This document shows positions 20,116 to 64,000 of a stretch of DNA of 64,000 bases, piece after piece. The stretch covers positions 1-64,000 of the forward strand of contig NW_025765772.1 of assembly GCF_003918875.1 (NCBI RefSeq). The letters are read 5' to 3'. This DNA is from Haliotis rubra. Taxonomy: Eukaryota. A program made the translations under genes and the position numbers. The notes under the pieces are model-generated. The model had not been told where the DNA came from. It saw nothing but the letters and a program-made list of their open reading frames with translations, and searched no databases. Each line of letters starts with the position of its first letter. The first letter of the stretch is position 1.

Positions 20116-21284
20116 TGTGGCATCCATGGGGTTAATACCATTCGACTGGAGTTGTCTCCCTTCCACTGTACTATTTAGAGCCCCAGATGGAGCACGTTAT
20201 ATATACGCACATTTTGATGATGCCTGGCGTCATTACAGCAGCAAACTCTGTGTTCGTTAAATAAAATAAAAATATAATCTTTGCAACAAAGTGTTTAATC
20301 GACAGAGGTGTGGTTTTATTATGGACTGACTGTATTTGTTTGGTTCACTGAGGTATAATAACATTTTCGTTGTGTTCATTGTAAGTCCTGCATTCAATTT
20401 TAAGTACTTGTATATAGTTACTGTTTATTGTATAGGTGTCAGATTTTAAGTTTACAGATAAAATATAACAAACCCTCTCAGTTAAATATATCCCTGCACT
20501 TATGCAATTACTCAATTAACAATAGCCACCCTACTGGGTCAGGCAAGGTTCTGAGTGTATAGTGTATTTCTTAAAGAATTGTTACATTAATGCATCGGTG
20601 TGTACTTAAATGTATCTATTGTTTTCCAACCATCAGTACAGCCTAATTAAAGCTAAATTATGACTTAACGTATTGTGTAAATGTATAATCGTATGAAAAT
20701 GTGGTATGAAATAGTGAGGGTGGATGTGATATTTGTTGCTTTTATTATAACTTATTTTTATATACCATTATTAGTATTATCAAGATTGTATTTTAACGTT
20801 TCTTAGAATGATCCGTGATGATTGATGATCCTTGACTGCTATGAGAGCTTGTTTACACTCATTTGCCACACAGTGGTAAGTGTACTTTATGATCTTGTAT
20901 GTAATAAACTCTATATATTTCCTTCATGTATATTTGTAATATATTCATTGAATGTCATAAATGATATATGTATGTATGAATAGTTTTCATGTTGCTATCT
21001 ATATTTAAAGATGTATTTATGCTAGTACGTGTTTTGTCTGGGCTAGCTGCATGCTAAGACTATATAGAATGTGTAATACATGTATACGTAAGCCATGTTA
21101 TACCTTTATGCTCAAATACTTAGTTATTTTTATGTATATTTTCAGAGTTATTCAAACATTCCTTTTAATGGATAAATAAAGTGGCAGTCATCTGTGACCA
21201 CAAGTAGCGTTGTGTTGTGTGCGCTCCACCCACCCACCAACATTCACCCATATCCGCTACTACATTTTGGAGCCCCAGTGAGGA
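20116..21284 (+). mobile_element. LTR (~1.15 kb) with primer-binding site; truncated LTR retrotransposon
   Basis: TGT...TACA ends, AATAAA at ~21175, then TGGAGCCCCAGTGAGGA resembling the complement of the tRNA-Thr(UGU) 3' end. The 5' boundary is tentative. Confidence 0.55.
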
Positions 21285-37500: not shown

Positions 37501-40500
37501 AGCCCAGTAATCCAGCTTCCATATTGGCCGAACCTACTGATACATCCGCACACCAAGCAAGTCCACAGGAACCCAGCAGTGTTCCAGCTACACGTGTGGA
37601 CAGTATAAAATTGTGTTTGAAAAAGACCTTTTCATAATCTATGGGTTGTTATAAGATATCTAGTACAGGAGAATACTAGTTTATCTATAACCACACGAAT
37701 CAGCATGATTCAACTTGTCTGAGATTGAAGTAAGACAAGGATTGGTCCCCCGAGTTACTACGCATTAAGTTGGAAGAATATGACCAAGGAAATGCGTTCC
37801 CATGGGGATACAGGACGTATTTAAGGACAGCTGTTGAATCCAGTGGCTTGACCCACCACCTATTCCGACGGATTCTATAAGCAAAAGATCATGAGTCAGG
37901 ATAAGTATAAAATATCAATTTTACTCTAAAAATTACATTTTTATACTTATCCTGACTCATGTCGAACAAGACCTCCCAACCTCCCCGTTGAAGACACTTG
38001 TGATTTCACAGCAGAAAGAGGGAAAGAGGAAGGGAGGTAACACATGGGTGAGTATTTATACGTCCGCTTCGGGAACATAAAGGGATTCAAGTGTTCTACT
38101 ACCATTCGAAAGGGAAAGGGAAATAAGCAAAAGATGATGAGTCAGGATAAGTATAAAATATCAATTTTACTTAAAAAATTACATTATCATTCTGTTGATA
38201 TAGTTGTGTAGGATAAAAGCACTTATCTAAATTCCTCTATTTTACAGAACAACGCTGTCTTCTTTTTATAAAACATTGGTGTGGCAGCATGCTGAAAATG
38301 GTGATCAAGAATTCAGTAACCAATTGTCCTACTACAGGTACTAATTTTGTCTGTCATGGCTTGCACAGCAAGTCAAATCATGCAACATTCAATATGTTAG
38401 GGGTTACCAAATATGTCTATTCATACATATATTCATGTATTTTGCCCAGTTTTTATATCCATACACCTACTGTAAAAAGGAAACAAGTTCCTTTGTCAAT
38501 CAAATCGGTATCAACAATCTCAGAAGTCACAATACAATGACTAAAATTATGTTAAATTTTCAGAATCGGCTCCCAAAACTGATCCATGTCTGTACAAAAC
38601 ATTTATTAACACAGGCCTAAAGCCAAGATGGTGTGAAATGATGATCTACCTTGAACATTTTTTTAATAGTGTTTATCATGACGAGAGGTACATCATTGCA
38701 GAAATTGACCTCATATACACAATAACTTCATTATTCATATATTTTCAACATGAATTATCAACACAACATTCACAACATTAACTTTGTCTTTAAGATTCCG
38801 ATATGCATGGTATGCATACTTGGACTTGTTGGATATATCCTATGAGGAGGGCTTCCAGTGCCCCTGCTGTGGGGAGTCACCAGAGGTAGTCATTATGGAT
38901 GGTGTCACCCTGGGGATCAAAAACACCCACATGGACTGGAAGATGCCACAAGAAGAACCACAGAACCTGGATGGAAGATAAGTAACACAACAGTTTCATT
39001 ATTAGTGTTGACAAAGTATCCACAGATTTAATATAGATATGCATTTATATCTAGAATTATATTATTTATATAGTCATGCCAGGATCACTGCACATGGGTG
39101 GAAACAATGACACAACAAAACTCTATGCAATGGTATTGAGTACTATATATCTACAATTCTTGTCACCAAGTGCACATCAAGCATGGTCAGGATGTTAAAC
39201 ACAAGTTGATTCTCACATAGATGCAGCCAAACCTGAGGTGCTATTATACGTCACACATCATTGCTTATATGTCACAATGCTGATCCCAACTTTGAACACT
39301 TACTTTTGTGACAAATGCTTTATGTGCAAATTGTGTTTATACTACTTTCAGCTCTAGGGTCTTTATCAAGAATCAGAGATGTAGAAAGCTGTTGAGGCAG
39401 TTTACAATCCGCATCCTCACCCAACAGGAAATGGCGGAGCTTCAGACGCTGCTGACCACATATGCACCCTTTTTTGGAGCCTTTGTTTTCAGAAATTGGT
39501 TCAAATTTTCATTATGGAAAGTGCCCCAAAATCTTCAGTTCTATCATTTGTACCTTGAGCTCGGATTATCCTTTGTTGGCTTTAATTCATATTGAAGATG
39601 AAATTGTTTTGGATATTCTCATGGATGAGTCTAAAGGGGCAAATTTTAGACATAACATCTCTTACATGGCCATTTTGGAAGATAAAGTCCCAACACTCTT
39701 TTCACTGCTGTCTCATTTTTCAGAAACTCCTGCTTATGTTCGTCCCCTGTTGCTTGCTTTTGTAGAAAATGTGGGTCAGTTTTTGAATGTCGATGAACAT
39801 GATTTAGAGGCATGTACAGCAATTTCAGTCTTCATCTTGAATTGTTAAATGGTTGTTACTTGTTGATAGGTGTTATTTTATGGAGTACGTCGAAAGTAAT
39901 CTGCACCTGAAATTCCTTTTCCATATCCATGATACAAGAATTTCTGATTAATGAATCATTTAGTATTAAATTTTGAATTTGTGTAGCCCAGAAATACATA
40001 AACTTTTCATTATATTTTGTCATGAAATATAACTAAATGGATTTTTACTTTCACCTTATAAAGTAATTTATATTATTTCATAGATTTCTGAATCAGAAGC
40101 ACATCCAGACATGAGGACCCAGTACTTTCCATCACTGAATGTCTGCAACCGGAGAGGCTCATATGTTTTGGATGACAAGAACCAAAGGGGACCCTGCAGG
40201 AAAAGTCCTGGCAGTCATCCTTCACTCACCCCAGGATTGTTCACTTTATCCTGTCAACATGGTGAATGTTGTTTGGCCTTATGTCTCATCAAATAGTTCA
40301 TCATAAAGTTTTATGCAATAGAACTCAATACAAACTTGAATATTTTTTATCATACTTGCAATACATTATACTAATTGCGGTGATTTCATTCAAAAGACAT
40401 TCTATTAATATCAAGGTCACCCAAGGTAATAAAAATGACAAACATTCCAATGTTTTTCTAGTCCATAACTAATAAACCAATAACACAATTATGGGATTAA

Positions 40501-41979
40501 CATGCAGGGTTATAATCTGGGGTGAATGCTTAGAATCCAATCACAAAAACATCTTTTGTAGGTGTGTGCTATGGATTTAGCATGATGCAGGATGCTGAGT
40601 CCCCAAATGTTCCATTCACCCTTCTCCGTACACGGTTCAAGAAAGGTGAGTTGATATCCTTCTTTCAGTTTCTAGAGAGCTCATGCCATTGCATGCTTGT
40701 CTTGTACATGTATTGATAATTACAGCCTTGGGTAAATAAAGTTCACTCAATTGTTTTTCAGCATGTATATATTCTCTACCCTGGTATGGCTGAAACCACT
40801 AGTTTTATCATGCAGAAAATGATGTTTGTGATCAGAGTATGTGTTATTTGAATGTTGCTCTCAGAATTCTTAACTAAATTGAATCACGACTTTGCTGTTA
40901 GCTATGACAATAAAACTTGTATATGTACACACACCCTGCCCAAAGTTTGCATGTAGTTTGAGAAGGTGAGGTGTAGCCCTCGCCTGTGTGTAGACAACAG
41001 ATGAGTTTATACAAAAGATATTACTTAAATACGCAACTTCTTAATGCCTATAATGACCAAAACATTTCAACAGCATATCTATATTCACAGCTCCCAAGAT
41101 GGTCATTTATGACAATGCATGTAACCTGCATGCATATTGTATGAACCGAGATCCAGGTTTTTTTCAAAAACACCTGGTTTGTTGTTGACCGATTCCACTG
41201 GCCAAATCACAAAGGTAACCATTCTTTTTTTAAAGTCAGTTTTCATTATGATTTATTATAAATCATGACAGTAATGCATCATAATATTAATAGCAGTATA
41301 CACAAGCTTTGAAACATCAGGCAAGCATTGAACTGGTACCTTTGTCTGTGTTTTAATTTTCAGTATACAAGAAGTTCAAATGAAGGGTTTTAGTCTTTTG
41401 AATCATTAAATGTTTACCAATACCTTTAAAAAGCACTTTTTCATGAATCAGTAATGTTGTGTGTATGTCATTGTTTTTTACATACATGCTTTTGTCAGTA
41501 ATTTATTTATTTCATCAGCAATATGTTTGGTAATATAACCATTTGGTGGTAGTATACCTGTAACCTAATACTTGTCTGAATGCACAGCATTGTTCTGTGA
41601 CAGTACCATAATTGTCAATACTTCACATATTTTGGTTTGGTAACCATCATAAGTCTCTGGCTACATACCTCTTATGATAATAAAATTCTGAAGTCATTCA
41701 TTGACCTACTTTTTGTTTGCAGGTTGTCATGATGGATACAATCTATCAAAGTACAATAAATACCGAAGCCTGAATACTCAAGTAGCTGAACAACGGAATG
41801 CTACACTGAATAAATTAAGAACTATGCTTTCATACATGAATGTAGACCATTTTATGTCACATTGTAAATTTTATGTTTGGTTTCGAAGCATGGTCTCAAT
41901 GGCAGCAAAGCAAGAAAACAAACTAAAACAGTATACTGCCCTCTTCCAAATTCTATCAAAAGTGTATTCAACGCTATAA
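34597..41979 (+). CDS. Spliced KDZ-family transposase with CxC4-like Cys clusters (HMGXB3-related), disrupted
   Basis: Exons about 34597-35037, 36455-36590, 38248-38278, 38795-38977, 39352-39809, 40084-40261, 40562-40645, 41091-41214 and 41723-41979. Motifs: CVCGSPW, CSNC..FDGGDQHVLNMG, FQCPCCGESPEVVIMDGVTLG, LTPGLFTLSCQHGVCYGFSMMQDAESPNVPF, VIYDNACNLHAYC, VVDRFHWPNHKGC, NTQVAEQRNATL. Frameshifts at ~39470 and ~41160; one donor reads ATAAGT (38978). Confidence 0.85.
35357..36391. mobile_element. Possible MITE in a transposase intron
   Basis: Imperfect ~32-bp inverted pair CTCACTCAGCCAGAGTCTAACCAAAAAGGTCT / AGACCTGTTTTGACAGAATCTGGCTAAGTAAGAG. Confidence 0.45.
36772..38185 (+). mobile_element. 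Internally deleted DIRS1-like tyrosine-recombinase retrotransposon
   Basis: Inverted terminal repeats (36775-36905 vs 38020-38150) and an internal complementary region at 37878-37960 that copies both ends. Coding remnants TEWML, IDLFATRFNKQLQTFVSPVPDPQAWATDALSMSWEGLNA and LWPARAWFPDL are typical of the DIRS RNase H/methyltransferase-like region. Confidence 0.88.
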
Positions 41980-42081
41980 ATAAGAACTTTCATTTTGAAA
42001 TATTGTTCAAACAGGACCATCACTGTACATTGTTATATATGTATAAATTGTTTTCCTTTTCTGGCATACTCACGTTTGTAT

Positions 42082-48000: not shown

Positions 48001-48339
48001 GTTATAGTGATAATGTTCGACTTTACGGCACAACCATGTCCTTAGAGAGTGGATACAGATCAGTTCACACGTGTGACCATGTTGCATGATTGGATGTCAT
48101 TGTAGGCCGTATGCTGCGCACACACCTAATTATGTAAAAAATAACCGTTATATTCAGTTGAAACAATGCAAGAGTATATACGAATACCAACTCGCTTTAC
48201 TATCACCATACCTTCTCGTGTTGGGCACACAATTTGGCGCAAATCGGAATTTAAAGATGCCGCCCTCTTCGATTTCCTCCAAATGTTTCATACAATAGAG
48301 TCCATCCGCTATTGTAGAGATGGCACCACTTGGATCATT
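42082..48339 (-). CDS. Spliced gene encoding an OTU-like fold plus a Ulp1/C48 SUMO-protease domain; putative 5' exons near 49890-50030
   Basis: Exons near 48339-48212, 47936-47793, 47560-47431, 46808-46636, 45823-45725, 45387-45300, 45133-44960, 42524-42457 and 42186-42082. Ulp1 motifs: LRAVLANEWLDDHVVDTCL, CHWAIVYMD, VPKQTNGRDCGVF. OTU-like motifs: CGEGSSLWEVF, TIMLIAGALKREVIVH, VHVYVDRGGRAYHL. Confidence 0.72.
43615..44450. repeat. 69-bp satellite (~11 copies), intronic
   Basis: Unit CAGATGGCATTGATACTACTTGTAGTAACCCATGCATTCTCTGGTGCCACTGCCAGTAAAATATATACT. Confidence 0.95.
47143..47385. repeat. Second array of the same 69-bp satellite (~3.5 copies)
   Basis: Same unit as 43615-44450, in another intron of the same gene. 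Confidence 0.9.
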
Positions 48340-49499
48340 CTGTAGGCGAATAAAATACAAATGATTGTTTAATCTCTAGACTATTTCATATGGCTCTAAG
48401 GTTTCAAAAATATGACTCTTAAAACGCGTTTACTCGAATTTTGTTCTCTGTTAGAGCCACCTCACTTTTGGCAAACAGTGTACCTGTGATGCGCTTAAGC
48501 TATAAAAAGGGGCACTCTACAGTTGTAAGCACCACATGTGATTCATGAAGTGTATTTATCAGAACTGCACTTTTGGCAAACAGTGTACCTGTGTGGCGCT
48601 TAAGTCAGAAAACGGGCACTCGACAGCTGTAAGCGCCACATGTAATTGATGAAGTGTATTTATCAGAACAACCTCACTTTTGGCAAACAGTGTACCTGTG
48701 AGGCGCTTAAGTCAGAAAACGGGCGCTCTACAGCTGTAAGCGCCACATGTGATTCGTGAAGTGTATTTATTATAAACATCTCACTTTTGGCAAACAGTGT
48801 ACCTGTGTGGCGCTTAAGTCAGAAAACGGGCACTCTACAGCTGTAAGCGCCACATGTGATTGATGAAGTGTATTTATCAGAACAACCTCACTTTTGGCAA
48901 ACAGTGTACCTGTGTGGCGCTTAAGTCAGAAAACGGGCACTCTACAGCTGTAAGCGCCACATGTGATTGATGAAGTGTTTTTATCAGAACCATCTCACTT
49001 TTGGCAAACAGTGTACCTGTGAGGCGCTTAAGTCAGAAAACGGGCACTCTACAGCTGTAAGCGCCACATGTGATTGATGAAGTGTATTTATCAGAACCAT
49101 CTCACTTTTGGCAAACAGTGTACCTGTGTGGCGCTTAAGTCAGAAAACGGGCACTCGACAGCTGTAAGCGCCACATGTAATTGATGAAGTGTATTTATCA
49201 GAACAACCTCACTTTTGGCAAACAGTGTACCTGTGTGGCGCTTAAGTCAGAAAACGGGCTCTCTACAGTTGTAAGCGCCACATGTGATTGATGAAGTGTT
49301 TTTATCAGAACCATCTCACTTTTGGCAAACAGTGTACCTGTGAGGCGCTTAAGTCAGAAAACGGGCACTCTACAGCTGTAAGCGCCACATGTGATTGATG
49401 AAGTGTATTTATCAGAACCATCTCACTTTTGGCAAACAGTGTACCTGTGAGGCGCTTAAGTCAGAAAACGGGCACTCTACAGTTGTAAGCGCCACATGT

Positions 49500-51560
49500 G
49501 ATTGGTGAAGTGTATTTATCAGAACCATCTCACTTTTGGCAAACAGTGTACCTGTGTGGCGCTTAAGTCAGAAAACGGGCACTCTACAGCTGTAAACGCC
49601 ATATGTGATTGATGACTGACTGACTGAGTTTGGTTTTACGCCGCTTTTAGCAATATTCCAGCAATATCACGGCGGGGAACACCAGAAATGGGCCTCACTC
49701 ATTGTACCCATGTGGGGATTCGAACCAGGGTCTTCGGCGTGACGAGCCAACGCTTTAACCACTAGACTACCCCACCGCCCCTGTGATTGATGAAGTGTAT
49801 TTATCAGAACCATCTCACTTTTGGCAAACAGTGTACATGTGAGGCGCTTAAGTCAGAAAACGGGCACTCTACAGTTGTAAGCGCCACGTGCCTGCATTTA
49901 CAAAGTGTCTAAACCTTTTGGGACGCATCCCTTCTATGTGAGTAAGTTGGAGGATAATGACAGGGTAGGTTTAAGCAAATGTTCCTGTCTAAATCTACCT
50001 TTCTCATGGCGCTCTCCAAGCCGCAGCATTTCTCGTTGGATTCCTGGCTTATACTTTCGGCTGGTGGCTACGAGTGGGAAAACAAGGGTGTGTCATTGAG
50101 AGGTTCCTGGTAGCATGTTAGATGGTATTCGTTAAGTTTCATATACGACACGAGTTGAAACTAGTTCAAGAAGGACTTGCTACAGGTCACTGATCTTGTA
50201 TAGTTACTCTGGGCGCCTGTTACCATGCTGTATACGTTTATGGCGCTTAAGTCAGAAAACGGGCACTCTACAGCTGTAAGCGCCACATGTGATTGATGAA
50301 GTGTTTTTATCAGAACCATCTCACTTTTGGCAAACAGTGTGCCTGTGTGGCGCTTAAGTCAGAAAACGGGCACTCTACAGCTGTAAGCGCCACATGTGAT
50401 TGATGAAGTGTATTTATCAGAACCATCTCACTTTTGGCAAACAGTGTACCTGTGTGGCGCTTAAGTCAGAAAACGGGCACTCTACAGCTGTAAGCGCCAC
50501 ATGTGATTGATGAAGTGTATTCATGAGAACCATCTCACTTTTGGCAAACAGTGTACCTGTGTGGCGCTTAAGTCAGAAAACGGGCACTCTACAGCTGTAA
50601 GCGCCACATGTGATTGATGAAGTGTATTCATGAGAACCATCTCACTTTTGGCAAACAGTGTACCTGTGAGGCGCTTAAGTCAGAAAACGGGCACTCTACA
50701 GCTGTAAACGCCATATGTGATTGATGACTGACTGACTGAGTTTGGTTTTACGCCGCTTTTAGCAATATTCCAGCAATATCACGGCGGGGGACACCAGAAA
50801 TGGGCCTCACTCATTGTACCCATGTGGGGATTCGAACCCGGGTCTTCGGCATGACGAGCCAACGCTTTAACCACTAGACTACCCCACCGCCCCTGTGATT
50901 GATGAAGTGTATTTATCAGAACCATCTCACTTTTGGCAAACAGTGTACATGTGAGGCGCTTAAGTCAGAAAACGGGAACTCTACAGTTGTAAGCACCACG
51001 TGCCTGCATTTACAAAGTGTCTAAACCTTTTGGGACGCATCCCTTCTATGTGAGTAGGTTGGAGGATAATGACGGGGTAGGTTTAAGCAAATGTTCCTGT
51101 CTAAATCTACCTTTCTCATGGCGCTCTCCAAGCCGCAGCATTTCTCGTTGGATTCCTGGCTTATACTTTCGGCTGGTGGCTACGAGTGGGAAAACAAGGG
51201 TGTGTCATTGAGAGGTTCCTGGTAGCATGTTAGATGGTATTCGTTAAGTTTCATATACGACACGAGTTGAAACTAGTTCAAGAAGGACTTGCTACAGGTC
51301 ACTGATCTTGTATAGTTACTCTGGGCGCCTGTTACCATGCTGTATACGTTTATGGCGCTTAAGTCAGAAAACGGGCACTCTACAGCTGTAAGCGCCACAT
51401 GTGATTGATGAAGTGTTTTTATCAGAACCATCTCACTTTTGGCAAACAGTGTGCCTGTGTGGCGCTTAAGTCAGAAAACGGGCACTCTACAGCTGTAAGC
51501 GCCACATGTGATTGATGAAGTGTATTTATCAGAACCATCTCACTTTTGGCAAACAGTGCA
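49500..51560. repeat. 1112-bp tandem segmental duplication
   Basis: Near-identical unique block at 49905 and 51017, including the SINE and flanking satellite units. Confidence 0.9.
49616..49781 (-). mobile_element. tRNA-derived short SINE inserted in the satellite, 12-bp TSD
   Basis: Flanked by TGTGATTGATGA on both sides; duplicated at 50728-50893. Confidence 0.9.
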
Positions 51561-52381
51561 CCTGTGTGGCGCTTATAAGTCAGAAAACGGACACTCTACA
51601 GCTGTTAGCGCCACATGTGATACATGAAGTGTATTTATTATAAACATCTCACTTTTGGCAAACAGTGCACCTGTGTGGCGCTTATAAATCAGAAAACGGA
51701 CACTCTACAGCTGTAAGCGCCACTTTCCATTGGTACTGTGTATTTATCAGAAACATCTCACTGTTTAGGTAAGGAAACGTGCTCACTACACCTGTAAGCG
51801 CCATAAGTTCATCAACAAGCAGTAAACGGGTAAATGAGATTTGTGAAGGCCACATGGCATTGATCCTGTGTGTTTATTACTTGCATTGTAATTGAAGCAG
51901 GCATTTAATATGTGGTACAAATACAAAAAAAATCAGCAGAATTCCAGATGCAACATGGATGTATGTGATGTTTATTACATGGCAGATTGTTTTATTGACC
52001 TGTTACCTTTCTGACGCACAATGAATATATGCTTTAATGCTTTGTTGTTATGAATGATTTTACTTACTAGGTTCTTGTTGATTATCTGTTCAAGCTAAAA
52101 TATAAATATAGCCATTAGACACAAAGCTATAAGACAAAAAAATATGTAATGTGAGGATAATTTACTTTGAATATGGGTGCCGAAATGCACTTAGTGGTAA
52201 ACAATTCAATTAAATGTTGAAATTATTACAATTAACTTTATATCATTCAAAAATTATTGATTCATTACATAACGAAGTTAGTGTATAAACTATAAAATAA
52301 GAAACATAATTGTAGACATTGGCAACTCTGATGAGTAGCTACCAGCTATTCAATATATGATATGACATGTTCTATTGAACC

Positions 52382-52547
52382 GGGCGATGGGGTAGCCTAG
52401 TGGTTAAAGCGTTGACTAGTCATTGCGAAGACCCGGGTTCGATTCCCCACATGGGCACAATGTGTTAAGCCCATTTCTGGTGTCCCCCGCCGTGATATTG
52501 CTGGAATATTGCTAAAAGCGGCGTAAAACTAAACTCAGTCAGTCAGT
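52382..52547 (+). mobile_element. tRNA-derived short SINE with TSD
   Basis: Full-length copy flanked by TCTATTGAA. Confidence 0.85.
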
Positions 52548-53154
52548 CTATTGAAGTACAGATGCTCTTGTTAGCTGCGCATAGTGAGAACACCAAGGAA
52601 AGACACAAACTATAACCCTAATATTCCATAATATATTTTAATGTCATTGTTTGCATTGTTTTCTTATCTAACAAAACATACAAAAATGATTATGTTTGAT
52701 GTACATTCAAAGTATATAAACTAAAAAAACCTAATATGTTTTGCTCAATTAAGAACAATTAAGAACAATTAAGAACTGTGGAAATCTGATCGAGAGTTTC
52801 GGGGTAAGAACTTTGGAAATTAGCAAAGTTGCCAGATTGATATTGGGCGGATTACCTGCACAATGTAAAAGTTACCTACAGTTAATGGAGTATTGTGTAC
52901 ATTGCACGCTGGAGTGATGGTGTAGGTGAGTCACGTCTATATCAAGACAGTGCTCTAGAGATATGTTGGTTAGTATTGTGAAAACTGAAAGGAAAAGGAA
53001 CCATTAAATAGAAACTTCAACAAACAACGCAAATACAGAGATAATACCACTTCATGGCTATCGGCCGAATTGACATAACCGCTAGAATTAAGTTTCTGAA
53101 AAAGGAATAAATAGAATCAATTTCCGTTCGTAATTTGTCAACAATGAAAGTTAC

Positions 53155-55273
53155 TCAAAACAAGGCCCGTGAGGGAGAACCCTTAAGACAGGCTCCTGAA
53201 CTATAACTCGGCTAGAGAGATAATTTAAAATATACTTTAATTTATGGTTTTCAGAAAAAGAATATAATATATCATGTATATTACCGATATCACGTGGCGT
53301 TTCCAGCTGCACATGATATGTCTGAGGTTGGATGCCGTCTGCAGCCGATGTTTAGTGCCAGCTGAGATCGAAGATTATTGTGATTATTAACACCTTATTT
53401 GTTTCTATAATTGTAAAGTGTAACCAATATGCATGAGCATGAATATTATTTACAACTTAATCACTGAAAACAACTTTTAGAATGACACAATATAATTACA
53501 AAAACACTTTTATTATTTTTTGAATAAATAATACATATGATACAGGTTGCATTGAACCCCCCTTCTTCAACAATCGTGTTAATGCCCCTTATTGACGACT
53601 TCTACACGAAGCATCCACATGAAAGCAATAACATGTTTCTCAGTAGCACTATATACTGTGTGCGGACTACAGCGAGGACCGTGTTGAGAAGAACATTAAC
53701 TAAATATATCATTGCTCATTGCTATATTTATTTCCATATGAATTCTTAAGGATACAGTTGGAAAAAAGTACTTATTGATTCTTTGCGAGGCATGTGGTAT
53801 GCGTTGGAAGGACATGGAGACAACTGTCTATTGCTGGTAAGGACGTACCAGTGCTACTTCTGGGTACGTGATTAGGTGGCTGTTATGCAGAAGTTGTTTT
53901 CCATTAAAAGGTCATGTACTTGAGATTATTAGTACATGACCTTAATTAACATCGATTTTCATTCTGGGAAAGAAGTGGACTTTACATAATTTCCATTCCT
54001 GAGTAAAAGTTTGAGATAAGGAGATTTGTGTGAAAAGCATACCATCGTCCGTGTGTGTTGCTGAGGGCGCCACAAACGGCACACCCTCAGGCCACCAAGA
54101 AGGCCGAAGGCCTTCGTTTCCCCAAATACATCGGGATCCCTTGGCACCTGGGAACAACAGGATAGATTATATCATATATGTTACATCGCAGGTAATTCGA
54201 ATGATATGGTATATATAATACTGAATAATGTTTTCTTATGTGTGACGATACACAAGCATGCACGCACGCACCCAAAACGCACAGACTTTACCTTTGTCAA
54301 TTGTGACCTGAGTGACCGCTCGTCTTAATAGGTGGACGTCCCGGACGTCGGCGTAGTCCACCGCCATGGATATACGTCGAAGGTCGACTTTTTCCTCTAA
54401 AAATATTTCAAATTAAATAAGGTGGTATTTAACATGATATATGTTATGCTCTTACTGTAAGTAAAGTATGAGGAGTGAGAGCACGTACCTTCCTGAGTGG
54501 TAGCGGGCGCTACCGGTGCAATATTCAGTATGTTAACCAGGTTGCTGCGGCCAACAGCCTCAACCATATCTTGGTGTCCTGTTTTAATATAATTAAGTTA
54601 AAAGGCATTAAAAAGCTTTAAGTGATTGTATTTTATGGTAAAGCGATGAGACGCGAGTTTTTTCAATAGATAGTCCACTTACTTATGTATAATATATATT
54701 ACAATATGGGAACGAAATGTTATTTCAATTGAGCGAAACGGTTTTTTTATATTAGCACATATACTTTGTTTTTAAATACTATATCAGTAATTAAGAAGTT
54801 CAGCATTGACGAGAGCTCTATTTGTGTACACCCAAGACGGCATGTCAGGCTATTCGACATTAACAATCTGGATATGATTTCAGATGAAATGTAAAAAAAG
54901 CATACCAACAACCTTCAATGTTCCCTCGGTTGTGAGGTGCACAAGGGCCATTTGTGGCATCCCTTGAATTTTACCAAAATTCCGCACCTTAATGTAAAGT
55001 AAGGCAAGTAAAACAACAATGATAAAGAATTTGAATATATTGTATTTATTTCATATAGAAAAATATGTATTCTCTAGGGAAGCTTATAAAATGTAAACTT
55101 TATAGGGCATGAACGAAGGGCATGAACGAATACGAACACAAACTTAGTGATTAGCACAACATAAATATACGTAGACAGTGTCTTAAAGTTAAAAAACATA
55201 CCCTTTGCCTCAATCTCCCCATTCTTTTCCTGGCATTCGCCCGTTTTCGTTTGTATTCAGGGACTGGATTGTT
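53155..55273 (-). CDS. Spliced gene encoding an NRF1/Erect-wing/P3A2-like DNA-binding domain protein; start exon not resolved
   Basis: Phase-consistent GT-AG exons 55273-55202, 54987-54906, 54578-54489, 54396-54292, 54147-54043, 53361-53285 and 53211-53155. They give RANARKRMGRLRQRVRNFGKIQGMPQMALVHLTTEGTLKVVGHQDMVEAV ... GSRCIWGNEGLRPSWWPEGVPF ... NLRHIMCSWK, comparable to NRF1 RLLRKLR..QAIVL..FKVFG..WGKESCKPIWWPEDIPW..ALRTIVKNCYK. Confidence 0.72.
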
Positions 55274-55414
55274 CTATATCAACACATGAAACGAACTATT
55301 ATGATACTGGAAAGAGTATTACAATACTAACTAAATAAAACTAAAATATATATACGGGTTTGACAAGTTTGTATAGCTGTGTGCCCTCCCGCCCAGCCCT
55401 TGATGTAACAATAC

Positions 55415-58400
55415 TGTAACGCTACGGTACTTACTGTAATGCCACAGTGCTTACTGCAATGCTACAGTGCTTACTGTAATGCTGCGGTGCGTACTGTTCC
55501 ATCTACGGTGCTTACTGTAATGCTACGGTGCTTACTGTGCCATCTAGGATGCTTACTGTAATGCTATGGTGCTTACTGCAATGCTACAGTGCTTACTGCA
55601 ATGCTACAGTGCTTACTGTAATGCTACAGTGCTTAATGTAATGCTACAGTGCTTACTGTAATGCTACAGTGCTTACTGTAATGCTACAGTGCTTAATGTA
55701 ATGCTACAGTGCTTACTGTAATGCTACAGTGCTTACTGTAATGCTACAGTGCTTAATGTAATGCTACAGTGCTTACTGTAATGCTACAGTGCTTACTGTA
55801 ATGCTACAGTGCTTAATGCTGTGCTTAATGTAATGCTACAGTGCTTACTGTAGTGCTGTAATGCTACAGTGCTTACTGTAATGCTACAGTGCTTACTGTA
55901 ATGCTACAGTGCTTAATGTAATGCTACAGTGCTTAATGTAATGCTACAGTGCTTAATGTAATGCTACAGTGCTTACTGTAATGCTACAGTGCTTACTGTA
56001 ATGCTACAGTGCTTACTGTAATGCTACGGTGCTTACTGTAATGCTACAGTGCTTACTGTAATGCTACAGTGCTTAATGTAATGCTACAGTGCTTAATGTA
56101 ATGCTACAGTGCTTACTGTACCGCTACCGTGCTTACTGTAATGCTACGGTGCTTACTGTAATGCTACGGTGCTTACTGTAATGCTACAGTGCTTACTGTA
56201 ATGCTACGGTGCGTACTGTACCATCTAGGGTGCTTACTGTATTGCTACAGTGCTTACTGTAGTGCTACAGTGCTTACTGTAATGCTACAGTGCGTACTGT
56301 ACCATCTAGGGTGCTTACTGTATTGCTACAGTGCTTACTGTAATGCTACGGTGCTTACTGTACCGCTACGGTGCTTACTGTACCGCTACGGTGCGTACTG
56401 TACCATCTAGGGTGCTTACTGTAATACTGCGGTGCTTACTGTAATGCTACGGTGCTTACTGTAATGCTACAGTGCTTACTGTAATGCTACGGTGCGTACT
56501 GTACCATCTACGGTGCTTACTGTAATGCTACGGCGCTTACTGTAATGGTACGGTGCTTCCTGTACTGCTACGGTGCTTCCTTACTGTAATGCTATGTGCA
56601 GCCCTTAATGTAATGCTACAACCCTTACTGTAATGCTACAGTACTAACTGTTATGCTACAGTACTAACTGTTAGATAGATAGATATTCTTTATTTCCTCC
56701 ATAAAATTACAAGATTACATTTGTATGGTAAACAACAGTACATAAAACTTTCTAATTATTAGTACTTATATTATACAGTAATATTCAATTGTGAAAGAAC
56801 TGAAGGTATCTATGAGCATTGCCGGAGTATGCTCTCCCAACTGCGAACAGAGAGACTAATCATTACCACCAGTTCTGACCAAACATTATAATCCAGTACA
56901 TCCTTACAGTGGTCAGGTATACCTCCGAGGAGGAATGACACGAATACATCATCGTGTTCCATCCACATTTTAACAAAAATGTCTATGTCAAGAGTATCAC
57001 AGATTCTTTCAAATAGAGAATTCCTTTCTACTAAGTTATGCTGGCATGACATAAAAACATGTTTCATAATGCCGTGAGCAAATGTTCCGCATAGACATTC
57101 CTTTGATTCTATTGGAGTTGCACCAAGCCTTATTATTCTATAATGCTACAGTACTAACTATTATGCTACAGTACTAACTGTTGTAAGGCTACAATCCTTC
57201 CTTACTGTAATGCTACAGTACTAACTGTTATGCTACAGTACTAACTGTTGTAAGGCTACAATCCTTCCTTACTGTAATGCTACAGTACTAACCGTTATGC
57301 TACAGTACCAACTGTTATGCTACAGTACTAACTGTTATGCTACAGTACTAACTGTTGTAAGGCTACAATCCTTCCTTACTGTAATGCTACAGTACTAACT
57401 GTTATGCTACAGTACTTATTGTAAGGCTACAATCCTTCCTTACTGTAATGCTACAGTACTAACTGTTATGCTACAGTACTTATTGTAAGGCTACAATCCT
57501 TCCTTACTGTAATGCTACAGTACTAACCGTTATGCTACAGTACTAACTGTTATGCTACAGTACTAACTGTTATGCTACAGTACTTATTGTAAGGCTACAA
57601 TCCTTCCTTACTGTAATGATACAGTACTAACCGTTATGCTACAGTACTTATTGTAAGGCTACAATCCTTCCTTACTGTAATGCTACAGTACTAACTGTTA
57701 TGCTACAGTACTTATTGTAAGGCTACAATCCTTCCTTACTGTAATGCTACAGTACTAACCGTTATGCTACAGTACCAACTGTTATGCTACAGTACTAACC
57801 GTTATGCTACAGTACTTATTGTAAGGCTACAATCCTTCCTTACTGTAATGCTACAGTACTAACTGTTATGCTACAGTACTAACTGTTGTAAGGCTACAAT
57901 CCTTCCTTACTGTAATGCTACAGTACTAACCGTTATGCTACAGTACCAACTGTTATGCTACAGTACTAACTGTTATGCTACAGTACTAACTGTTATGCTA
58001 CAGTACTTATTGTAAGGCTACAATCCTTCCTTACTGTAATGCTACAGTACTAACCGTTATGCTACAGTACTAACTGTTGTAAGGCTACAATCCTTCCTTA
58101 CTGTAATGATACAGTACTAACCGTTATGCTACAGTACTAACTGTTGTAAGGCTACAATCCTTCCTTACTGTAATGCTACAGTACTAACCATTATGCTACA
58201 GTACTAACTGTTATGCTACAGTACTAACTGTTATGCTACAGTACTAACTGTTATGCTACAGTACTAACTGTTATGCTACAGTACTAACTGTTATGCTACA
58301 GTACTAACTGTTATGCTACAGTACTAACTGTTATGCTACAGTACTAACTGTTATGCTACAGTACTAACCGTTATGCTACAGTACTAACTGTTATGCTACA

Positions 58401-58545
58401 GTACTAACTGTTATGCTACAGTACTAACTGTTATGCTACAGTACTAACTGTTATGCTACAGTACTAACCGTTATGCTACAGTACTAACTGTTATGCTACA
58501 GTACTTATTGTAAGGCTACAATGCTTCCTTACTGTAATGCTACAC
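55415..58545. repeat. ~20-bp minisatellite with two subdomains and higher-order variants
   Basis: ATGCTACAGTGCTTACTGTA to ~56600, then ATGCTACAGTACTAACTGTT interspersed with GTAAGGCTACAATCCTTCCTTACT. Confidence 0.95.
56673..57140 (-). mobile_element. 5'-truncated LINE 3' end inserted in the minisatellite
   Basis: Minus strand gives CLCG....MKHVFMSC (C-terminal CCHC of ORF2), a stop, AATAAA and an (ATCT)n tail. Confidence 0.75.
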
Positions 58546-60089
58546 TATTTACTCAGCATCTTCGGTGATTTTAAGGGATAATAGAATTATGTACATAACT
58601 GAGTTTTAATATACATAATATGTTTGAAAGGAAACGTTCACGCTCACTCTTCTTGAAATAGGGAGGTAAAACAAAGAAAGGCAGGACACGACCAGTGGTT
58701 TCAAATGCATGCTGATTGGCTAAATGACATCAAAGTAAATACAGGTCACTGTGACGTCGTTGCACTATACCTCTACAATAATCAAGGGTAAACATTGTGT
58801 ATTTGATATGTTACAATGTTGTAACAAATAACATTAACAGCTGTTTTGCGCATGTTACACATGTAATTTGGAACTAATTCATTGTTTGTTTAGCTAACTA
58901 GGTTTACTTTTTATTACTTCTATTACTGTGTGTATATTTACTGAAGGTGGCTGTGTGGACTAATACATGAAATGCATGTATGTAGATTTCCTTTACAACG
59001 TTATTCACATGGCTACATGCGTCTTTCTTCCCTTTTTGGAAGGAAAGGCCGTATCCGTGGTATAGTAGTAGAGGTAGTGGGTTCAGTATGGGGCCGCGTC
59101 ATACCAAATGACGTTGACATAAGTTACTTGTTGTTACCCTGCCTTGCGCTCGTTTTTAGGGGTTACTGAGTGGGCTTTCACTAAAATAGACATTAGTATT
59201 GACTGGTACAAGAAGCAACACACATACGCTTGTTCACGTAGCCATATAAGTGCTATTATATTGAGCGCAGGGTAAACCCCATTATATCATATTTTCATTA
59301 ATGGCGACGTCATAGTGGTACACTTGACAGTAGGCTAGTGTGACCGTGGGTAATTATTTCCAGTATACGAAACCCGAGTGCAGTAAAATTTATATCGGGC
59401 AAGCAGTAATAGTGATTATGTTCAAAGAAATTACATAACGTTAGACTGATTCATATACACTCGTGGGACACGTCGGCGTAAAAACGTTTAGAAACGTAAG
59501 AACGTTTAGACCAAAGACGTATATACACGCGAATATACGTGTTTGAATAACCGTAAAAAAACACCGTAAATATATGGTATACATTATCTGTAACAATATG
59601 CTGAAGTGTGTGACAGAATAATAAGTATACCTTTACAACCCCCTTCTTAACACATGCTGATTTTTTCATGGTGATGATACACTGGTTTGTAGCCGTTAAA
59701 ATATGAATGATAAATAGATTTTTGAATTTTTGTTTATGTGTTGGTGCGGTTATGATTTTAGTGAGCGCTGCCATATACAGGCAGATAAGATGCGTGGTAT
59801 GGCGAGACAGACCCAAGTTGTAAAAAATGGGAAAAACATTGTGAGAGATTATAAATATTTTTTTCATTAGATCTACACAAGGTTTGTGACAGGTGATAGA
59901 TTGCACAAAATACATGCACAATACAGATATTATGTTTAAATATGTTTCTTGTATTGAAAAGTTTAGAATTGGCAGCAGAGTAATGAGTTCTCCCTCAACG
60001 AACTGATCTCGCGAGACGTGAGGTGATACGGCGAGAGTTGTGGCGCTTATAGCGGGCGCTTAGTTGAAAATGAGTTGCTATCATACCTC

Positions 60090-60281
60090 GTTTTCAGAGA
60101 TGTACATTTTTCATCGAAAACTAATGAAGAGTGATTTTTGATGATAAATAGAATCTCACCCTCGTGCCTTCTGATATCAAATATATCAACACTCGTTGAT
60201 AAAAGTAAAAATTATATGTGTAACTTTATCAACCCGTGTTGATATAATTGATATCAGTAGACACTTCGGTGAGATTCTCTG
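60090..60281. mobile_element. Right/hairpin end of the element family at 19171-19560
   Basis: Near-identical TTCAGAGATGTACATT..GATGATAAATAGAATCTCACCCTCGTG..palindrome. Confidence 0.7.
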
Positions 60282-63235
60282 TATACCCCCGTTGGGCAGA
60301 TTACCAATTTAAAAATACTTTGAGATCTCGGCAAGGAAGGATTGCAGAAGTGTAAAACATTCGATTTGTAATCACTGACAACTAAAGTATCAGTTTTACA
60401 TCATGTATGCCTTCAGGTTAAAAAGCGCTTTTAAGGCTTCACGCGTTGTATCCATGTCGGGAATCGAACCCGGGTCTTCTTCGTGACATGCGAACGTTTT
60501 AACCAGTAACCTAGCTACGTTATTTCAAAAGTCAATATTCCAGCATTGTGCCCATGTGGGAATCGAAGCAGGGCCTTCGGCGTGACGAGCGAACGCTTTA
60601 ACCACTAGGTTGGCGTCTTTTTGTCAAATTATAACACGCATCATGAAACCCGCTAGTCTGTCTCACAGTCCCTGAACCACATTAATTTCCCTAGTGCCAA
60701 GCCCTCTCTGCAGTGCTAAAGCCCTAAATAAAGCAAGTCTAGTCTGAATTTCTGGTCTCCCTAGGGCTCCCATTTCAATATAAATTGGCTTGTTTGTTAC
60801 TATCAAAATTATATATATTCAGAGACTAAGCCTTAGTCTAGAAACCCGCCAACAATCCTGTTTAAATTCCCCCCTTCAAAACGATCACCACACAGTATTT
60901 AAGCTGTAGTCACTCAACCGTGAGCAAATCCAAGCTGCTTGTCCGTGGTGGGTGGAATGTGGGTCGCAGTTCGGCGTGACGCTGCAATACACAACCGATG
61001 GACTGTAATATACACGACCCAAACTACCAACTGCTCAGGAAAACTTACTATGCATATTTACCCGGAACAAGTGATAAACGCAGCAATGAACACCGACAAC
61101 CGGCGCCATCCGACCGGAACCACATCCCATAATGCTCTGCGTCAGGACGGTTTTCTGTCTATTGTAAGTATTGAGTCTATTGTGAGTTGATCAATGCGTG
61201 ACTGGGTATAACTGGGATAGGCGCTGCTCCACCAAATACACCCGAACGGTCACAATGACCAATTGTACGCAGGAAACCATTTAACATGAAATATAAACGA
61301 TTTGTTAGGGGCAAGTTATGACATGTTATTTTCTTACATACATTGTGTAATTTTGAAGTCTTGTTGGATGTATTCATCATAATTTCACTGTACTAAGCTG
61401 TATTTACTAATACCATTTGGTATTAAACGATTCATGTTTTAACTTTCATTGGCTCTCTTGGGGTTTCGGTCGAGTTGGTCTTCTGCAACCCATGCTTGTC
61501 GACAAACCCCATAGATCGATGCTAGTGATGTCGAACCCTGGGTGTTTTGGTCCAGAGTTTTAACAGACCGACGTTACAAAGCTGTAATATTGCTTAGTAG
61601 AGCGTTACACAACACACAGAAACAATCACATCCCTCAGTGGAAGGCTTTGCTTGCATTTCATACAAATAAAACCTTTAGTCAACAACATAATTTTTTTTA
61701 CCACAAAATTACAGTAATTATGACTTCTTAAAATAACAGGGATTTGTGGGGATAATGGAAAACATGTTTCATTTTGTCGCCTATATTTCAGTAACCGTGC
61801 ATAAAAAATGCAATATTTCAACTTTGAGGTATTTAGATGTTTGTTGCCATTTTAGAAGATGGTATTTGATGAACATAGGTAATTTTCTGGGTTTCATCTT
61901 CTTGTTATTGTTTGGTACAACGTTTCAGGGCTTGTTCTGGCCCCATCATCAGGTAGAACTAAAGAACAGTAACTGTTACTGTTCTTTAGTTTAGTTTAGT
62001 TTAGTTAGAGGTATTTGTTTAAAATCGTGTTTCTTTGATGGATCGATAATATTTTGAGATCCGGTTTGACCAATGTGATATACGTTTATCACGGGAAATC
62101 ACGACTATGACTATTAATACACCTATCTACGTCGTATACTAGTATTCTAATAACAGTCACGGGAAACACATATATGTCGAGGCTATATGGAGATTAGGTT
62201 ATAAATAGACGGGGGAATTCCCATAGTTCGAGCGGCTGAATTTGAATCTTTGAGTCAGCACTATCAACAACATCATCTGTTCAGCGAAGTCCATCAGTCC
62301 CTCATGGATTGATGTTGATGGAAACTACTTGTTGTTATAGGTGACAGACTACTGGATACTAATATCAATAATGGATATTGGATAATATCGTCAATATTAG
62401 ACGGGTAAGTTCGGCATTATTTTCTTCCGGCTTATAATGAGGTCACAAGTTGTCATATATTGTTGATCGGTTATTCGCTTGTCGTGTGGGTATAAATTCA
62501 TTTGCAGCTATTAACCGCGACAGTTTTCCGGGTATCATGTAGAATGTAGCGTCCGTACAACGTTATACATTAACAATTTACTACTGAGTCAATTATTTTC
62601 CCTGATCAATAAGTTGCTGTGAAGCCCAATATGGAGTTATACGAATTATTTCAGTCAGTAACTACAGGAAACACCCTAGACTTGCACAAGCCTCTAAGGT
62701 AATAATTAATAGTTTACTGAAAATTTCTAAAACAAAATCAATTAAAGGTTGGCGTATAATCCAGACTTGCCTCTTAAAAGGACAGAATTACTAAACATCC
62801 ACGGGCTTACCATTCAGCACAGCCTGGGATCAAGGCTAAAAGCGCCCACGTGGTTAAATAAACAGGACATTAAACCAGCTTACACAGGCGCTCCCCTGCA
62901 TCCCCCAACCCCATCTCCCCCCGCCCTGTCCTGAAAGTTTTTTAAAAGACCATTGAAACTCTCGTGAAAACGGGTGTAAATGAACTGTGCAGCCCCCTTT
63001 CTTAAACAACATATAATGTAAATACACTATATATTCTACTCCACTGGCGGTGGGGTAGTCTTATGGTTTTAGCTTGCGCTCGTCATGTCGAAGGTCTGGG
63101 TTCGATTCATCACGCGATGCAATGTGTACAGCTCATTTGCTAAAACGTGCTTTAACCCTGACTCACTTAGACTGACACTTAAATATGTAATAAGCCTACT
63201 TAGGCAATCTAAACTTTATTCAATCATTCTAGACT

Positions 63236-63389
63236 NNNNNNNNNNNNNNNNNNNNNNNNNNNNNNNNNNNNNNNNNNNNNNNNNNNNNNNNNNNNNNNNN
63301 NNNNNNNNNNNNNNNNNNNNNNNNNNNNNNNNNNNNNNNNNNNNNNNNNNNNNNNNNNNNNNNNNNNNNNNNNNNNNNNNNNNNNNNNN
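63236..63389. other. Assembly gap (N run)
   Basis: Run of n. Confidence 0.99.
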
Positions 63390-64000
63390 AAAACATACTC
63401 CTTGACGAAGGGTTTGATACTTTTGAACATTGAGAAACTTGTATTGGTGTAAATATACATTGTTTTACATTGAAATGATGGGATAAACGTAAGATAGACT
63501 ACATGCTTATAGAATCCTTGTATGGTAGAGTTGCCCAGTTTCTACATGTGTACAAGCACATTCTGTTTCCTTGGTCGGCCTCTGCTCACTTAAACCGACA
63601 CACAAGAACACTCACCGTAAACTGGTGCAACGTTTCCTTGGTGTGTTTCAGCAACCGGGACATCGGAACAAGAGAACAGATTGCCTAGTTTGCACTTAAT
63701 GCCAAGTACTCTACTTGTAAACACGAAACAGAACACATATATGACATACTTTTAGTGTGTGAGTGAGTATGGTTTTAGTTAAACTCCAGCAGTAGCGCTG
63801 TGGGTGACACCAGAAATAGGCTGTGCACATTGCATCAACGTCTGGAATCGAACCAGGGCATTCGGCGTGAACAGGACCTTCACCACTAGACTAACCTACC
63901 GTGTTCTGTAGGATAATGTCCATTGTTCTAAATTAAAACACAAAGTTTTAGATAAGTATTTTCACGTTCTACAGTTTATAGATAGGACTTTTGGGAATGG

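What the first reader, a model, noticed from the sequence alone, without database searches (positions are those of the whole stretch)
53155..55273. NRF1/Erect-wing-like DNA-binding domain as transposon cargo
Seen: seven phase-consistent exons, mostly too short for the ORF track, that rebuild both halves of an NRF1-type DBD (basic helix, beta pair ending KVVG, and WGxxxxRPxWWPxxVPF). It is far more divergent than a true NRF1 orthologue and lacks the activation region. Inference: either the element captured the domain, or NRF1-type transcription factors are evolutionarily linked to this transposon lineage.
Basis: partly seen in the sequence, partly recalled or inferred. Interest (0 to 1): 0.75.

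Follow-up and report, generated by a model that had tools for sequence, protein, structure and literature searches.

The report
NRF1-like DNA-binding gene in abalone repeat
A small, spliced abalone gene really does encode a distant relative of the DNA-gripping part of the NRF1 transcription factor, and it sits inside a large repeated, probably mobile DNA unit, but its link to the neighbouring transposase-like gene is not proven.

Summary
The window is Haliotis rubra contig QXJH01001792.1. The exons are real. Seven minus-strand exons with canonical splice sites give the RefSeq protein XP_046564498.1 (164 aa from the first Met, 181 codons open from exon A). Transcriptome contigs cover exactly these exons.

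The last exon lies at 52984-52970, not near 53155. The RNA contigs use a donor 16 nt upstream in exon D (RefSeq isoform X2), which shifts the frame and removes the WG..WWP motif.

Only the C-terminal half is demonstrably NRF1-like:
- Pfam PF10491 scores E=3-5e-4, below its cut-off.
- PDB NRF1 DBD scores E=0.002, and 7.6e-6 with a small profile.
- Two of NRF1's three base-reading residues are not kept.

The N-terminal "basic helix + beta pair" has no statistical support.

The gene lies in a unit of at least 18 kb (about 42031-60093). That unit recurs at two other H. rubra loci and one H. asinina locus with unrelated flanks and one shared end. dN/dS is about 0.2.

The "KDZ transposase" label got no profile support. 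One copy loses homology 52 bp past that gene's stop. "Cargo" is therefore plausible, not shown.

The scan noted the same pairing on other DNA of this genome (s1-344810, s1-345049).

The parts
55202..55273 (-). Exon A: basic stretch EYKRKRANARKRMGRLRQR. The RefSeq start codon is at 55222. The frame stays open up to the acceptor at 55273.
   Evidence: Splice sites. RNA contig depth. The in-frame upstream part is conserved in H. asinina, where the Met is Leu.
54906..54987 (-). Exon B: predicted beta pair ending in KVVG.
   Evidence: Strands E20-25 and E31-34 appear in a low-confidence model.
54489..54578 (-). Exon C: linker region.
   Evidence: The acceptor is mutated to AT in copy L002.
54292..54396 (-). 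Exon D: first helix of the DNA-binding module (HLLRRAVTQV; R89 aligns with NRF1 R206). An alternative donor at 54308 is used in the RNA contigs (isoform X2, frameshift).
   Evidence: Both donors are conserved in all four copies.
54043..54147 (-). Exon E: WGNEGLRPSWWPEGVPF loop, the core of the NRF1-type DBD.
   Evidence: Pfam PF10491 E=0.0036 and PDB NRF1 E=0.007 on this exon alone.
53285..53361 (-). Exon F: second helix of the module (LQTASNLRHIMCSWKRHVIS).
   Evidence: RNA depth. Aligned to NRF1. Helix 75-94 in the model.
52632..52984 (-). Exon G: four codons (FSQY), the stop at 52970-52972, then the 3' UTR.
   Evidence: RNA contigs. RefSeq CDS range 52970-55222.
60040..60093 (-). Shared end of the repeated unit: AAACGAGGT|ATGATAGCAACTCA... 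followed by two TAAGCGCC motifs.
   Evidence: Homology with L001, L003 and the window starts here, and the flanks beyond are unrelated.
60007..60016 (.). Single TCTCGCGAGA palindrome about 80 bp inside the shared end. It is a possible promoter element for the minus-strand gene; that reading is inference.
   Evidence: One match against 0.01 expected. Kept in H. asinina and partly deleted in L001.
48453..51762 (.). 107-bp satellite in three blocks interrupted by SINE copies. Each unit carries an inverted pair of TAAGCGCCAC.
   Evidence: TRF. 45 motif matches against 2 expected. The motifs are unchanged in H. asinina monomers.
55412..58520 (.). Two blocks of a 20-bp minisatellite (55412-56671 and 57143-58520) upstream of exon A. 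They are colinear in all copies.
38754..41979 (+). Convergent transposase-like gene, seen as exon pieces with the motifs CPCCG..DGVTLG, PGLFTLSCQHG, YDNAC, DRFHWPNH and NTQVAEQRN. The family is not verified. A 7-T run at about 41158-41164 breaks the frame.
   Evidence: No Pfam hit. No homologue found.
42031..42031 (.). Point where copy L001 stops matching the window. It is either the left limit of the repeated unit or a breakpoint in that copy.

Best explanation
LOC124273302 is a small, intron-rich, transcribed gene. The C-terminal half of its product is a divergent NRF1-type DNA-binding module: a helix, a long WG..RP.WWP..VPF loop, then a second helix. It is preceded by a basic stretch and a short beta pair of unproven kinship, and it has no activation region.

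The gene is not the abalone NRF1 orthologue. It is one of several copies carried on a dispersed unit of at least 18 kb. That unit holds the gene, two minisatellite blocks, a 107-bp satellite and a second minus-strand gene. It shares one sharp end in two Haliotis species and sits in unrelated flanks, so it is or was mobile.

The coding sequence has been kept by purifying selection. I infer that the protein is an element-encoded, probably dimeric, sequence-specific DNA binder. It would recognise sites in the unit itself. The best candidates are the TAAGCGCCAC motifs, which are paired in the satellite and repeated beside the shared end. It would help assemble or regulate the element, much as TnpA does for En/Spm.

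Shown: the exon structure, expression of a near-identical copy, DBD homology, copy structure and selection. Inferred: mobility by the neighbouring transposase-like gene, dimerisation and the binding sites.
For: - Gene model and RefSeq identity.
- Spliced RNA contigs.
- NRF1 DBD homology: Pfam PF10491 E=4.9e-4 and 2.9e-4 over profile positions 149-198. PDB 8k3d/8k4l E=0.002-0.004. A small profile gives 8k3d E=7.6e-6 over 74 positions, and NRF1 is the only significant PDB family. The only three Foldseek rows are NRF1 chains. The nearest named Atlas clusters are PF10491. BLASTP to an NRF1-like metagenome ORF gives E=2e-7.
- Repeated unit: colinear matches run L001 to window 60093-42031, L002 to 59283-42324, and H. 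asinina L003 to 60036-47398. The flanks are unrelated and the terminal sequence is shared.
- Selection: dN/dS is 0.20 between species (56 of 108 changes synonymous, p=3e-10) and 0.19-0.30 among H. rubra copies, in both halves of the protein.
- Motif enrichment and conservation.
Against: - All single-sequence scores to PF10491 stay below Pfam's gathering score.
- The structural test failed: pLDDT was 33 and 60, Foldseek E=0.75, and VIA-align Z<2.
- The N-terminal half has no detectable kinship.
- NRF1 base-contact residues N242 and R244 align with Ala and Ser/gap, so the target sequence cannot be read off from NRF1.
- The RNA contigs show only the frameshifted isoform.
- No TIR or TSD was found.
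- The transposase-like gene has no profile support and carries a frameshift.
- Two of the three comparable copies lack that gene at the expected place.
- Exons are no better conserved than introns among the young H. rubra copies.
Confidence: 0.55

Rival explanations
1. This is a host gene family, not cargo. Abalones would have a lineage-specific set of small NRF1-like regulators lying in satellite-rich DNA that is prone to duplication. The transposase-like gene would be an unrelated neighbour or a separate insertion.
For: - Copy L001 loses homology 52 bp beyond the transposase-like stop.
- The H. asinina copy lies between FAA_hydrolase genes with no transposase-like gene called within 10 kb.
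- No TIR or TSD was found.
- Purifying selection fits a host function equally well.
- The KDZ label is unverified.
Against: - Copies share one end to within about 10 bp, then have unrelated flanks, in two species.
- An earlier scan note reports the same convergent pair on another piece of this genome. That note is unchecked.
- Damaged copies (L002 acceptor, L003 deletion) look like element decay.
Confidence: 0.3
2. This is a decaying relic. The copies are no longer functional, and the transcripts are aberrantly spliced leftovers.
For: - The assembled RNA isoform shifts the frame before the WWP motif.
- L002 has lost the exon C acceptor.
- L003 has a 46-bp deletion that removes the exon E acceptor.
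- Exon identity equals intron identity among H. rubra copies.
Against: - The window copy has seven intact exons, canonical sites and no stop.
- dN/dS is about 0.2 even among the H. rubra copies.
- Both exon D donors are conserved in both species, which suggests regulated alternative splicing.
Confidence: 0.12
3. This is the abalone orthologue, or an ordinary paralogue, of the NRF1/Erect-wing transcription factor.
For: NRF1 is the best named match everywhere.
Against: - The score is below the family cut-off.
- The protein is 164-181 aa with no activation region.
- It is multi-copy in repeats.
- The base-contact residues are changed.
Confidence: 0.01

Closest known systems
NRF1 / Erect wing / P3A2 transcription factors (Pfam PF10491; crystal structures 8K3D and 8K4L, PMC10810270)
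   Same: The C-terminal module has the same order of parts as the NRF1 DBD (aa 201-284): helix alpha5 carrying the Arg that aligns with R206, a long loop with GWG..KP.WWPE..P(W/F), then helix alpha6. The protein also has a basic stretch and a beta pair upstream, where NRF1 has its MADS-like dimerisation domain.
   Different: - It scores below the Pfam cut-off.
- N242 and R244, the TGCGC readers, are not kept.
- The upstream half shows no detectable similarity.
- There is no activation domain.
- The protein is 164-181 aa against about 500.
- It is multi-copy inside a repeated unit.
YDR124W-like helical bundle domain (Pfam PF11001) and multi-WWP proteins such as the sponge Halichondria panicea XP_064391676.1
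   Same: They share the ..P.WWP..V.F loop between two helices. The sponge repeats align with the abalone module at about 25% identity. The sponge protein as a whole hits both PF11001 and PF10491.
   Different: The abalone protein hits PF11001 only at E=0.03-0.06. It has a single module and different flanking parts.
TnpA of En/Spm (CACTA) transposons (my own knowledge)
   Same: This is an analogy of role only. TnpA is a second, non-catalytic, element-encoded DNA-binding protein that recognises short motifs repeated in inverted pairs near the element ends.
   Different: There is no sequence relation. Binding of the abalone protein to the TAAGCGCCAC repeats is untested.
KDZ (Kyakuja-Dileera-Zisupton) transposons carrying extra genes such as TET/JBP in fungi (PMC12730594)
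   Same: Both are large DNA transposons that carry a non-transposase gene. Kyakuja lacks TIRs, so the missing TIR here is not decisive.
   Different: Membership of the neighbouring gene in KDZ was not confirmed by any profile here. No 7-8 bp TSD was seen. The cargo is a DNA binder, not a dioxygenase.

Membership tests
NRF1/EWG/P3A2 (PF10491) | Whole-protein score at or above Pfam's gathering score (23.5 bits) | tested here: not met
   20.3 bits (P0002) and 21.0 bits (residues 60-164)
NRF1/EWG/P3A2 (PF10491) | DBD module: helix, GWG..KP.WWP loop, helix, alignable to the solved NRF1 DBD | tested here: met
   8k3d E=0.002 for the single sequence. 7.6e-6 over 74 positions with profile A4. The secondary-structure order matches.
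NRF1/EWG/P3A2 (PF10491) | Base-reading residues R206, N242, R244 (PMC10810270) | tested here: not met
   R89 aligns with R206. N242 aligns with Ala and R244 with Ser or a gap.
NRF1/EWG/P3A2 (PF10491) | MADS-like dimerisation domain upstream of the DBD | tested here: inconclusive
   No Pfam or PDB hit for residues 1-100. Shuffle tests gave p=0.29 and 0.71. Atlas features point to PF10491 only at 0.80. A beta pair is predicted at low confidence.
NRF1/EWG/P3A2 (PF10491) | Same three-dimensional fold as 8K3D | tested here: inconclusive
   Model pLDDT 60. Foldseek lists only NRF1 chains, but at E=0.75 and TM 0.35. VIA-align Z<2.
NRF1/EWG/P3A2 (PF10491) | C-terminal transcription activation region | tested here: not met
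   The stop comes four codons after the module, in an RNA-supported last exon.
YDR124W-like helical bundle (PF11001) | Score at or above the gathering score (31.3 bits) | tested here: not met
   13.9-14.9 bits
Cargo gene of a DNA transposon | Several copies with a common end and unrelated flanks | tested here: met
   Window, L001, L002 and L003
Cargo gene of a DNA transposon | Both ends defined, with TIRs and/or target-site duplications | tested here: not met
   Only the right end was found. There is no inverted copy of it in the window. The left limits differ between copies.
Cargo gene of a DNA transposon | Transposase gene inside the same unit in more than one copy | tested here: inconclusive
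   Present beside the unit in the window. Absent at the expected place in L001 and L003. L002 ends 350 bp short.
KDZ transposase (neighbouring gene) | Profile match to KDZ models | tested here: not met
   No Pfam family for any of 13 exon pieces at E up to 10. Piecewise search has low power.

The most novel reading that the evidence does not exclude
A family of large DNA transposons in abalones, and perhaps other molluscs, carries its own NRF1-type DNA-binding protein. That protein would recognise GCGC-core motifs (TAAGCGCCAC) arrayed in inverted pairs inside the element and beside its end, acting as a TnpA-like helper. This would tie the origin or spread of the NRF1/Erect-wing DNA-binding fold to mobile elements.
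Probability: 0.17. Interest if true: 0.8.

Novelty: new variant of a known kind. Interest (0 to 1): 0.5.

Why it matters
Many animal transcription-factor DNA-binding domains (THAP, BED, others) trace back to transposons. My three paper searches found no report of such a link for NRF1/Erect wing.

A short NRF1-type binder that travels with a repeated element and is kept by selection would be a concrete case to test. The element also carries arrays of a GCGC-core motif, which are candidate binding sites. This gives a tractable system for asking how the WG..WWP module reads DNA when two of NRF1's base-contact residues are replaced.

If the gene is only a host paralogue, the finding is a modest addition to an uncharacterised mollusc gene family.

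Tried and rejected
- Word-index homology searches with P0002 found only Haliotis proteins. One call failed on a parameter limit.
- The search with a 130-aa transposase-like exon found nothing.
- The Atlas search on that exon gave only generic helical-repeat clusters.
Scans of the second minus-strand gene likewise could not confirm the OTU or Ulp1 labels.
- Full-length structure prediction was useless (pLDDT 33).
- The domain model was too weak for a structural verdict.
- A candidate left end at 26983, an exact TAAGCGCCAC, showed no terminal similarity.
- GCGCNNGCGC, the NRF1 site pattern, does not occur in the window.
- I found no conserved upstream coding exon between 55.3 and 60.1 kb. The 202-aa ORF at 59454-60059 has stops in H. 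asinina.
- The findings look-up by sequence was blank.
- I did not type the spliced products of neighbouring genes into look-ups, so L002 could not be extended into the transposase region.
- The N runs in the window (10385-10525 and 63236-63389) were left untouched.

Full report
**What is there**

The window equals positions 1-64000 of Haliotis rubra contig QXJH01001792.1. On the minus strand I found seven exons with canonical AG/GT sites and consistent phases:

| Exon | Coordinates | Note |
|---|---|---|
| A | 55273-55202 | |
| B | 54987-54906 | |
| C | 54578-54489 | |
| D | 54396-54292 | |
| E | 54147-54043 | |
| F | 53361-53285 | |
| G | 52984-52970 | four codons, then stop |

A whole-library HMMER search with exon E alone returned a 164-aa protein identical to this splice product from the Met in exon A. 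That protein is RefSeq XP_046564498.1, 'uncharacterized protein LOC124273302 isoform X1'. The frame stays open for 17 more codons up to the exon A acceptor. That stretch is conserved in H. asinina, where the Met is Leu, so the true start probably lies in an upstream exon that I could not find.

**RNA**

Three transcriptome-like runs of the same species hold spliced contigs of 764-896 nt. Their depth fits the exon lengths to the nucleotide and is zero in the introns. A DNA run covers everything.

- The last exon is at 52984 with UTR to at least 52632. It is not near 53155.
- The contigs join 54308 to 54147, using a donor 16 nt upstream of the frame-keeping one.

That junction is RefSeq isoform X2 (P0007). 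It shifts the frame in exon E, loses the WWP motif and stops in exon F. Both donors are conserved in all copies and in H. asinina.

The RNA carries variants that match none of the three assembled copies but do match the H. asinina state (54338A, 54533G, 53354T). The expressed template is therefore another copy or allele about 99% identical to this one.

**Is it NRF1-like?**

The C-terminal half is.
- Exon E alone hits Pfam PF10491 (E=0.0036) and the PDB NRF1 chains (E=0.007).
- The whole protein gives PF10491 at E=4.9e-4 and 20.3 bits, over profile positions 149-198 of 213. Residues 60-164 give 21.0 bits. Both are below the 23.5-bit cut-off.
- PDB chains 8k3d and 8k4l give E=0.002-0.004.
- I built a small profile from the abalone module plus WWP repeats of a sponge protein and an unnamed ENA protein. 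It hits the NRF1 DBD at E=7.6e-6 over 74 positions, and nothing else is significant.
- A metagenome contig (L005) encodes a single-exon NRF1-like ORF. That ORF aligns to NRF1 across both domains and matches the abalone module at BLASTP E=2e-7.
- The nearest named clusters by ESM Atlas features are PF10491, at 0.84 and 0.83.

According to the NRF1 structure paper (PMC10810270), this region is the true DBD (aa 201-284). In the alignments, R89 matches the base-reading R206. N242 and R244 fall on Ala and on Ser or a gap, so the target sequence is probably not TGCGC.

PF11001 (YDR124W-like) also gives weak hits. This suggests a wider WWP-loop superfamily, which is my inference.

**What is not supported**

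- The N-terminal half, which in NRF1 is the MADS-like dimerisation domain, gave no Pfam or PDB hit.
- Its local alignment scores to the L005 N-half and to the NRF1 segment printed are no better than shuffles (p=0.29 and 0.71).
- Only Atlas features point to PF10491, at 0.80, which is a lead and no more.

**Structure**

The structural test is inconclusive.
- The full model had pLDDT 33.
- The module model had pLDDT 60, with a helix, a long loop, then a helix.
- Foldseek listed only NRF1 chains, but at E=0.75.
- VIA-align gave Z<2.
- Atlas shape matches had TM about 0.4.

**Context**

Two H. rubra paralogues (P0006 and P0005) and one H. asinina relative (P0008) were fetched with flanks. All three are colinear with the window over long stretches:

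| Locus | Species | Matches window |
|---|---|---|
| L001 | H. rubra | 60093-42031 |
| L002 | H. rubra | 59283-42324 (the end of the fetched DNA) |
| L003 | H. asinina | 60036-47398 |

Outside these ranges the flanks are unrelated to each other. The H. asinina copy lies between FAA_hydrolase genes.

The right end is sharp and shared: AAACGAGGT|ATGATAGCAACTCA..., then TAAGCGCCCGCTATAAGCGCCAC. A single TCTCGCGAGA palindrome lies 80 bp inside it.

The motif TAAGCGCCAC occurs 45 times against 2 expected. Nearly all of these are inverted pairs in the 107-bp satellite at 48.45-51.8 kb, and one is at 60040. The motifs are unchanged in the two H. asinina monomers, which differ from the consensus at 17 other positions.

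**Selection**

- Between the window and the H. asinina copy, dN/dS is 0.20 (56 of 108 changes synonymous against 24% expected; p=3e-10).
- Among the H. rubra copies it is 0.19-0.30 (p=0.004 and 0.0007).
- Both halves of the protein are constrained: 0.17 for exons A-C and 0.24 for exons D-G.

Some copies are nevertheless damaged. L002 has lost the exon C acceptor. L003 has a 46-bp deletion that removes the exon E acceptor and 25 nt of the exon.

**The transposon claim**

A convergent plus-strand gene at 38.75-41.98 kb has exon pieces whose motifs recall KDZ or CMC transposases: YDNAC, an H(3)H in DRFHWPNH, and NTQVAEQRN. That is a recalled resemblance, not a test.
- Thirteen pieces gave no Pfam family.
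- One search found no homologue.
- A 7-T run breaks the frame in the exon that holds YDNAC.
- I found no TIR or TSD. Kyakuja elements lack TIRs (PMC12730594), so this is not decisive.
- L001 stops matching 52 bp after that gene's stop codon, and L003 stops earlier still.

My data therefore show a mobile-looking unit of about 18 kb that carries the NRF1-like gene. They do not show that the transposase-like gene belongs to it.

Earlier scan notes report the same convergent pair on another piece of this genome (s1-344810, with s1-345049). I treat these as leads.

The common right end with variable left limits is unexplained.

**Literature**

Full-text searches found no paper that links NRF1-type domains to transposons.

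**Verdict**

This is a real, expressed, selected gene with a divergent NRF1-type DNA-binding module on a dispersed repeat. Whether it is cargo of a KDZ transposon remains open, at roughly even odds. My proposed mechanism, an element-encoded binder of the unit's own GCGC-core repeats, is inference.

Noticed in passing
window 52382-52548; also 49614-49780 and 50726-50892 (inverted); 60435-60609; 63773-63864: tRNA-derived SINE (CCTAGTGGTTAAAGCG...GGGTTCGATTCCC). It is present at enormous depth in both RNA and DNA runs. Copies interrupt the 107-bp satellite and lie in the 3' flank of the gene.
   Followed up: partly
window 41158-41164: A run of seven T in the transposase-like exon puts YDNAC...GFF and KNTWFVVDRFHWPNH in different frames. 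This is either a real frameshift in this copy or a homopolymer error of the assembly.
   Followed up: partly
window 56813-57145 (-): A 111-aa open segment resembling the C-terminal end of a non-LTR retrotransposon ORF2 lies between the two minisatellite blocks. It has no Pfam hit.
   Followed up: partly
window 36804-36906 and 38021-38126: Inverted repeats of about 100 bp (93% complementary) lie 1.1-1.2 kb apart, just upstream of the transposase-like exons. They probably mark a nested MITE-like insertion.
   Followed up: no
window 43663-44368 and 47212-47349: A 69-bp satellite (10 copies, 98% alike) plus a two-copy echo 3 kb away. Both lie inside the range of the 390-aa minus-strand gene model and are colinear in L001 and L002.
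   Followed up: no
window 55000-55099: RNA-run depth here comes from other contigs, because its depth ratios differ from those of the gene's contig. It may be an extra exon, an antisense transcript or a repeat.
   Followed up: no
L005 3361-4041 (contig VSKX01022522.1): A metagenome contig with a single-exon ORF that aligns to NRF1 across both the dimerisation and the DNA-binding parts (PF10491 positions 57-174, E=0.003; 8k4l E=8.6e-4). The organism is unknown. It could serve as a bridge sequence for this family.
   Followed up: partly
L003 1-6037 and 20082-22803 (H. asinina CM074540.1): Two FAA_hydrolase gene models on the same strand flank the H. asinina copy. Short repeats at 111-216 and 20889-20994 match the same window repeat. 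This points either to a tandem duplication or to one gene split by the insertion.
   Followed up: no
P0004 (Halichondria panicea XP_064391676.1): A sponge protein with five tandem WWP modules and a coiled-coil tail. It hits PF11001 at 3.8e-15 and reaches the PF10491 cut-off, and so links the two Pfam families.
   Followed up: partly
window 42970-51119 (-): A 390-aa gene model runs through the satellites downstream of the NRF1-like gene. It has no Pfam family on record. One exon-like piece (45724-45846, ...LANEWLDDHVVDTCL) recalls the start of Ulp1 proteases but gave no Pfam hit.
   Followed up: partly
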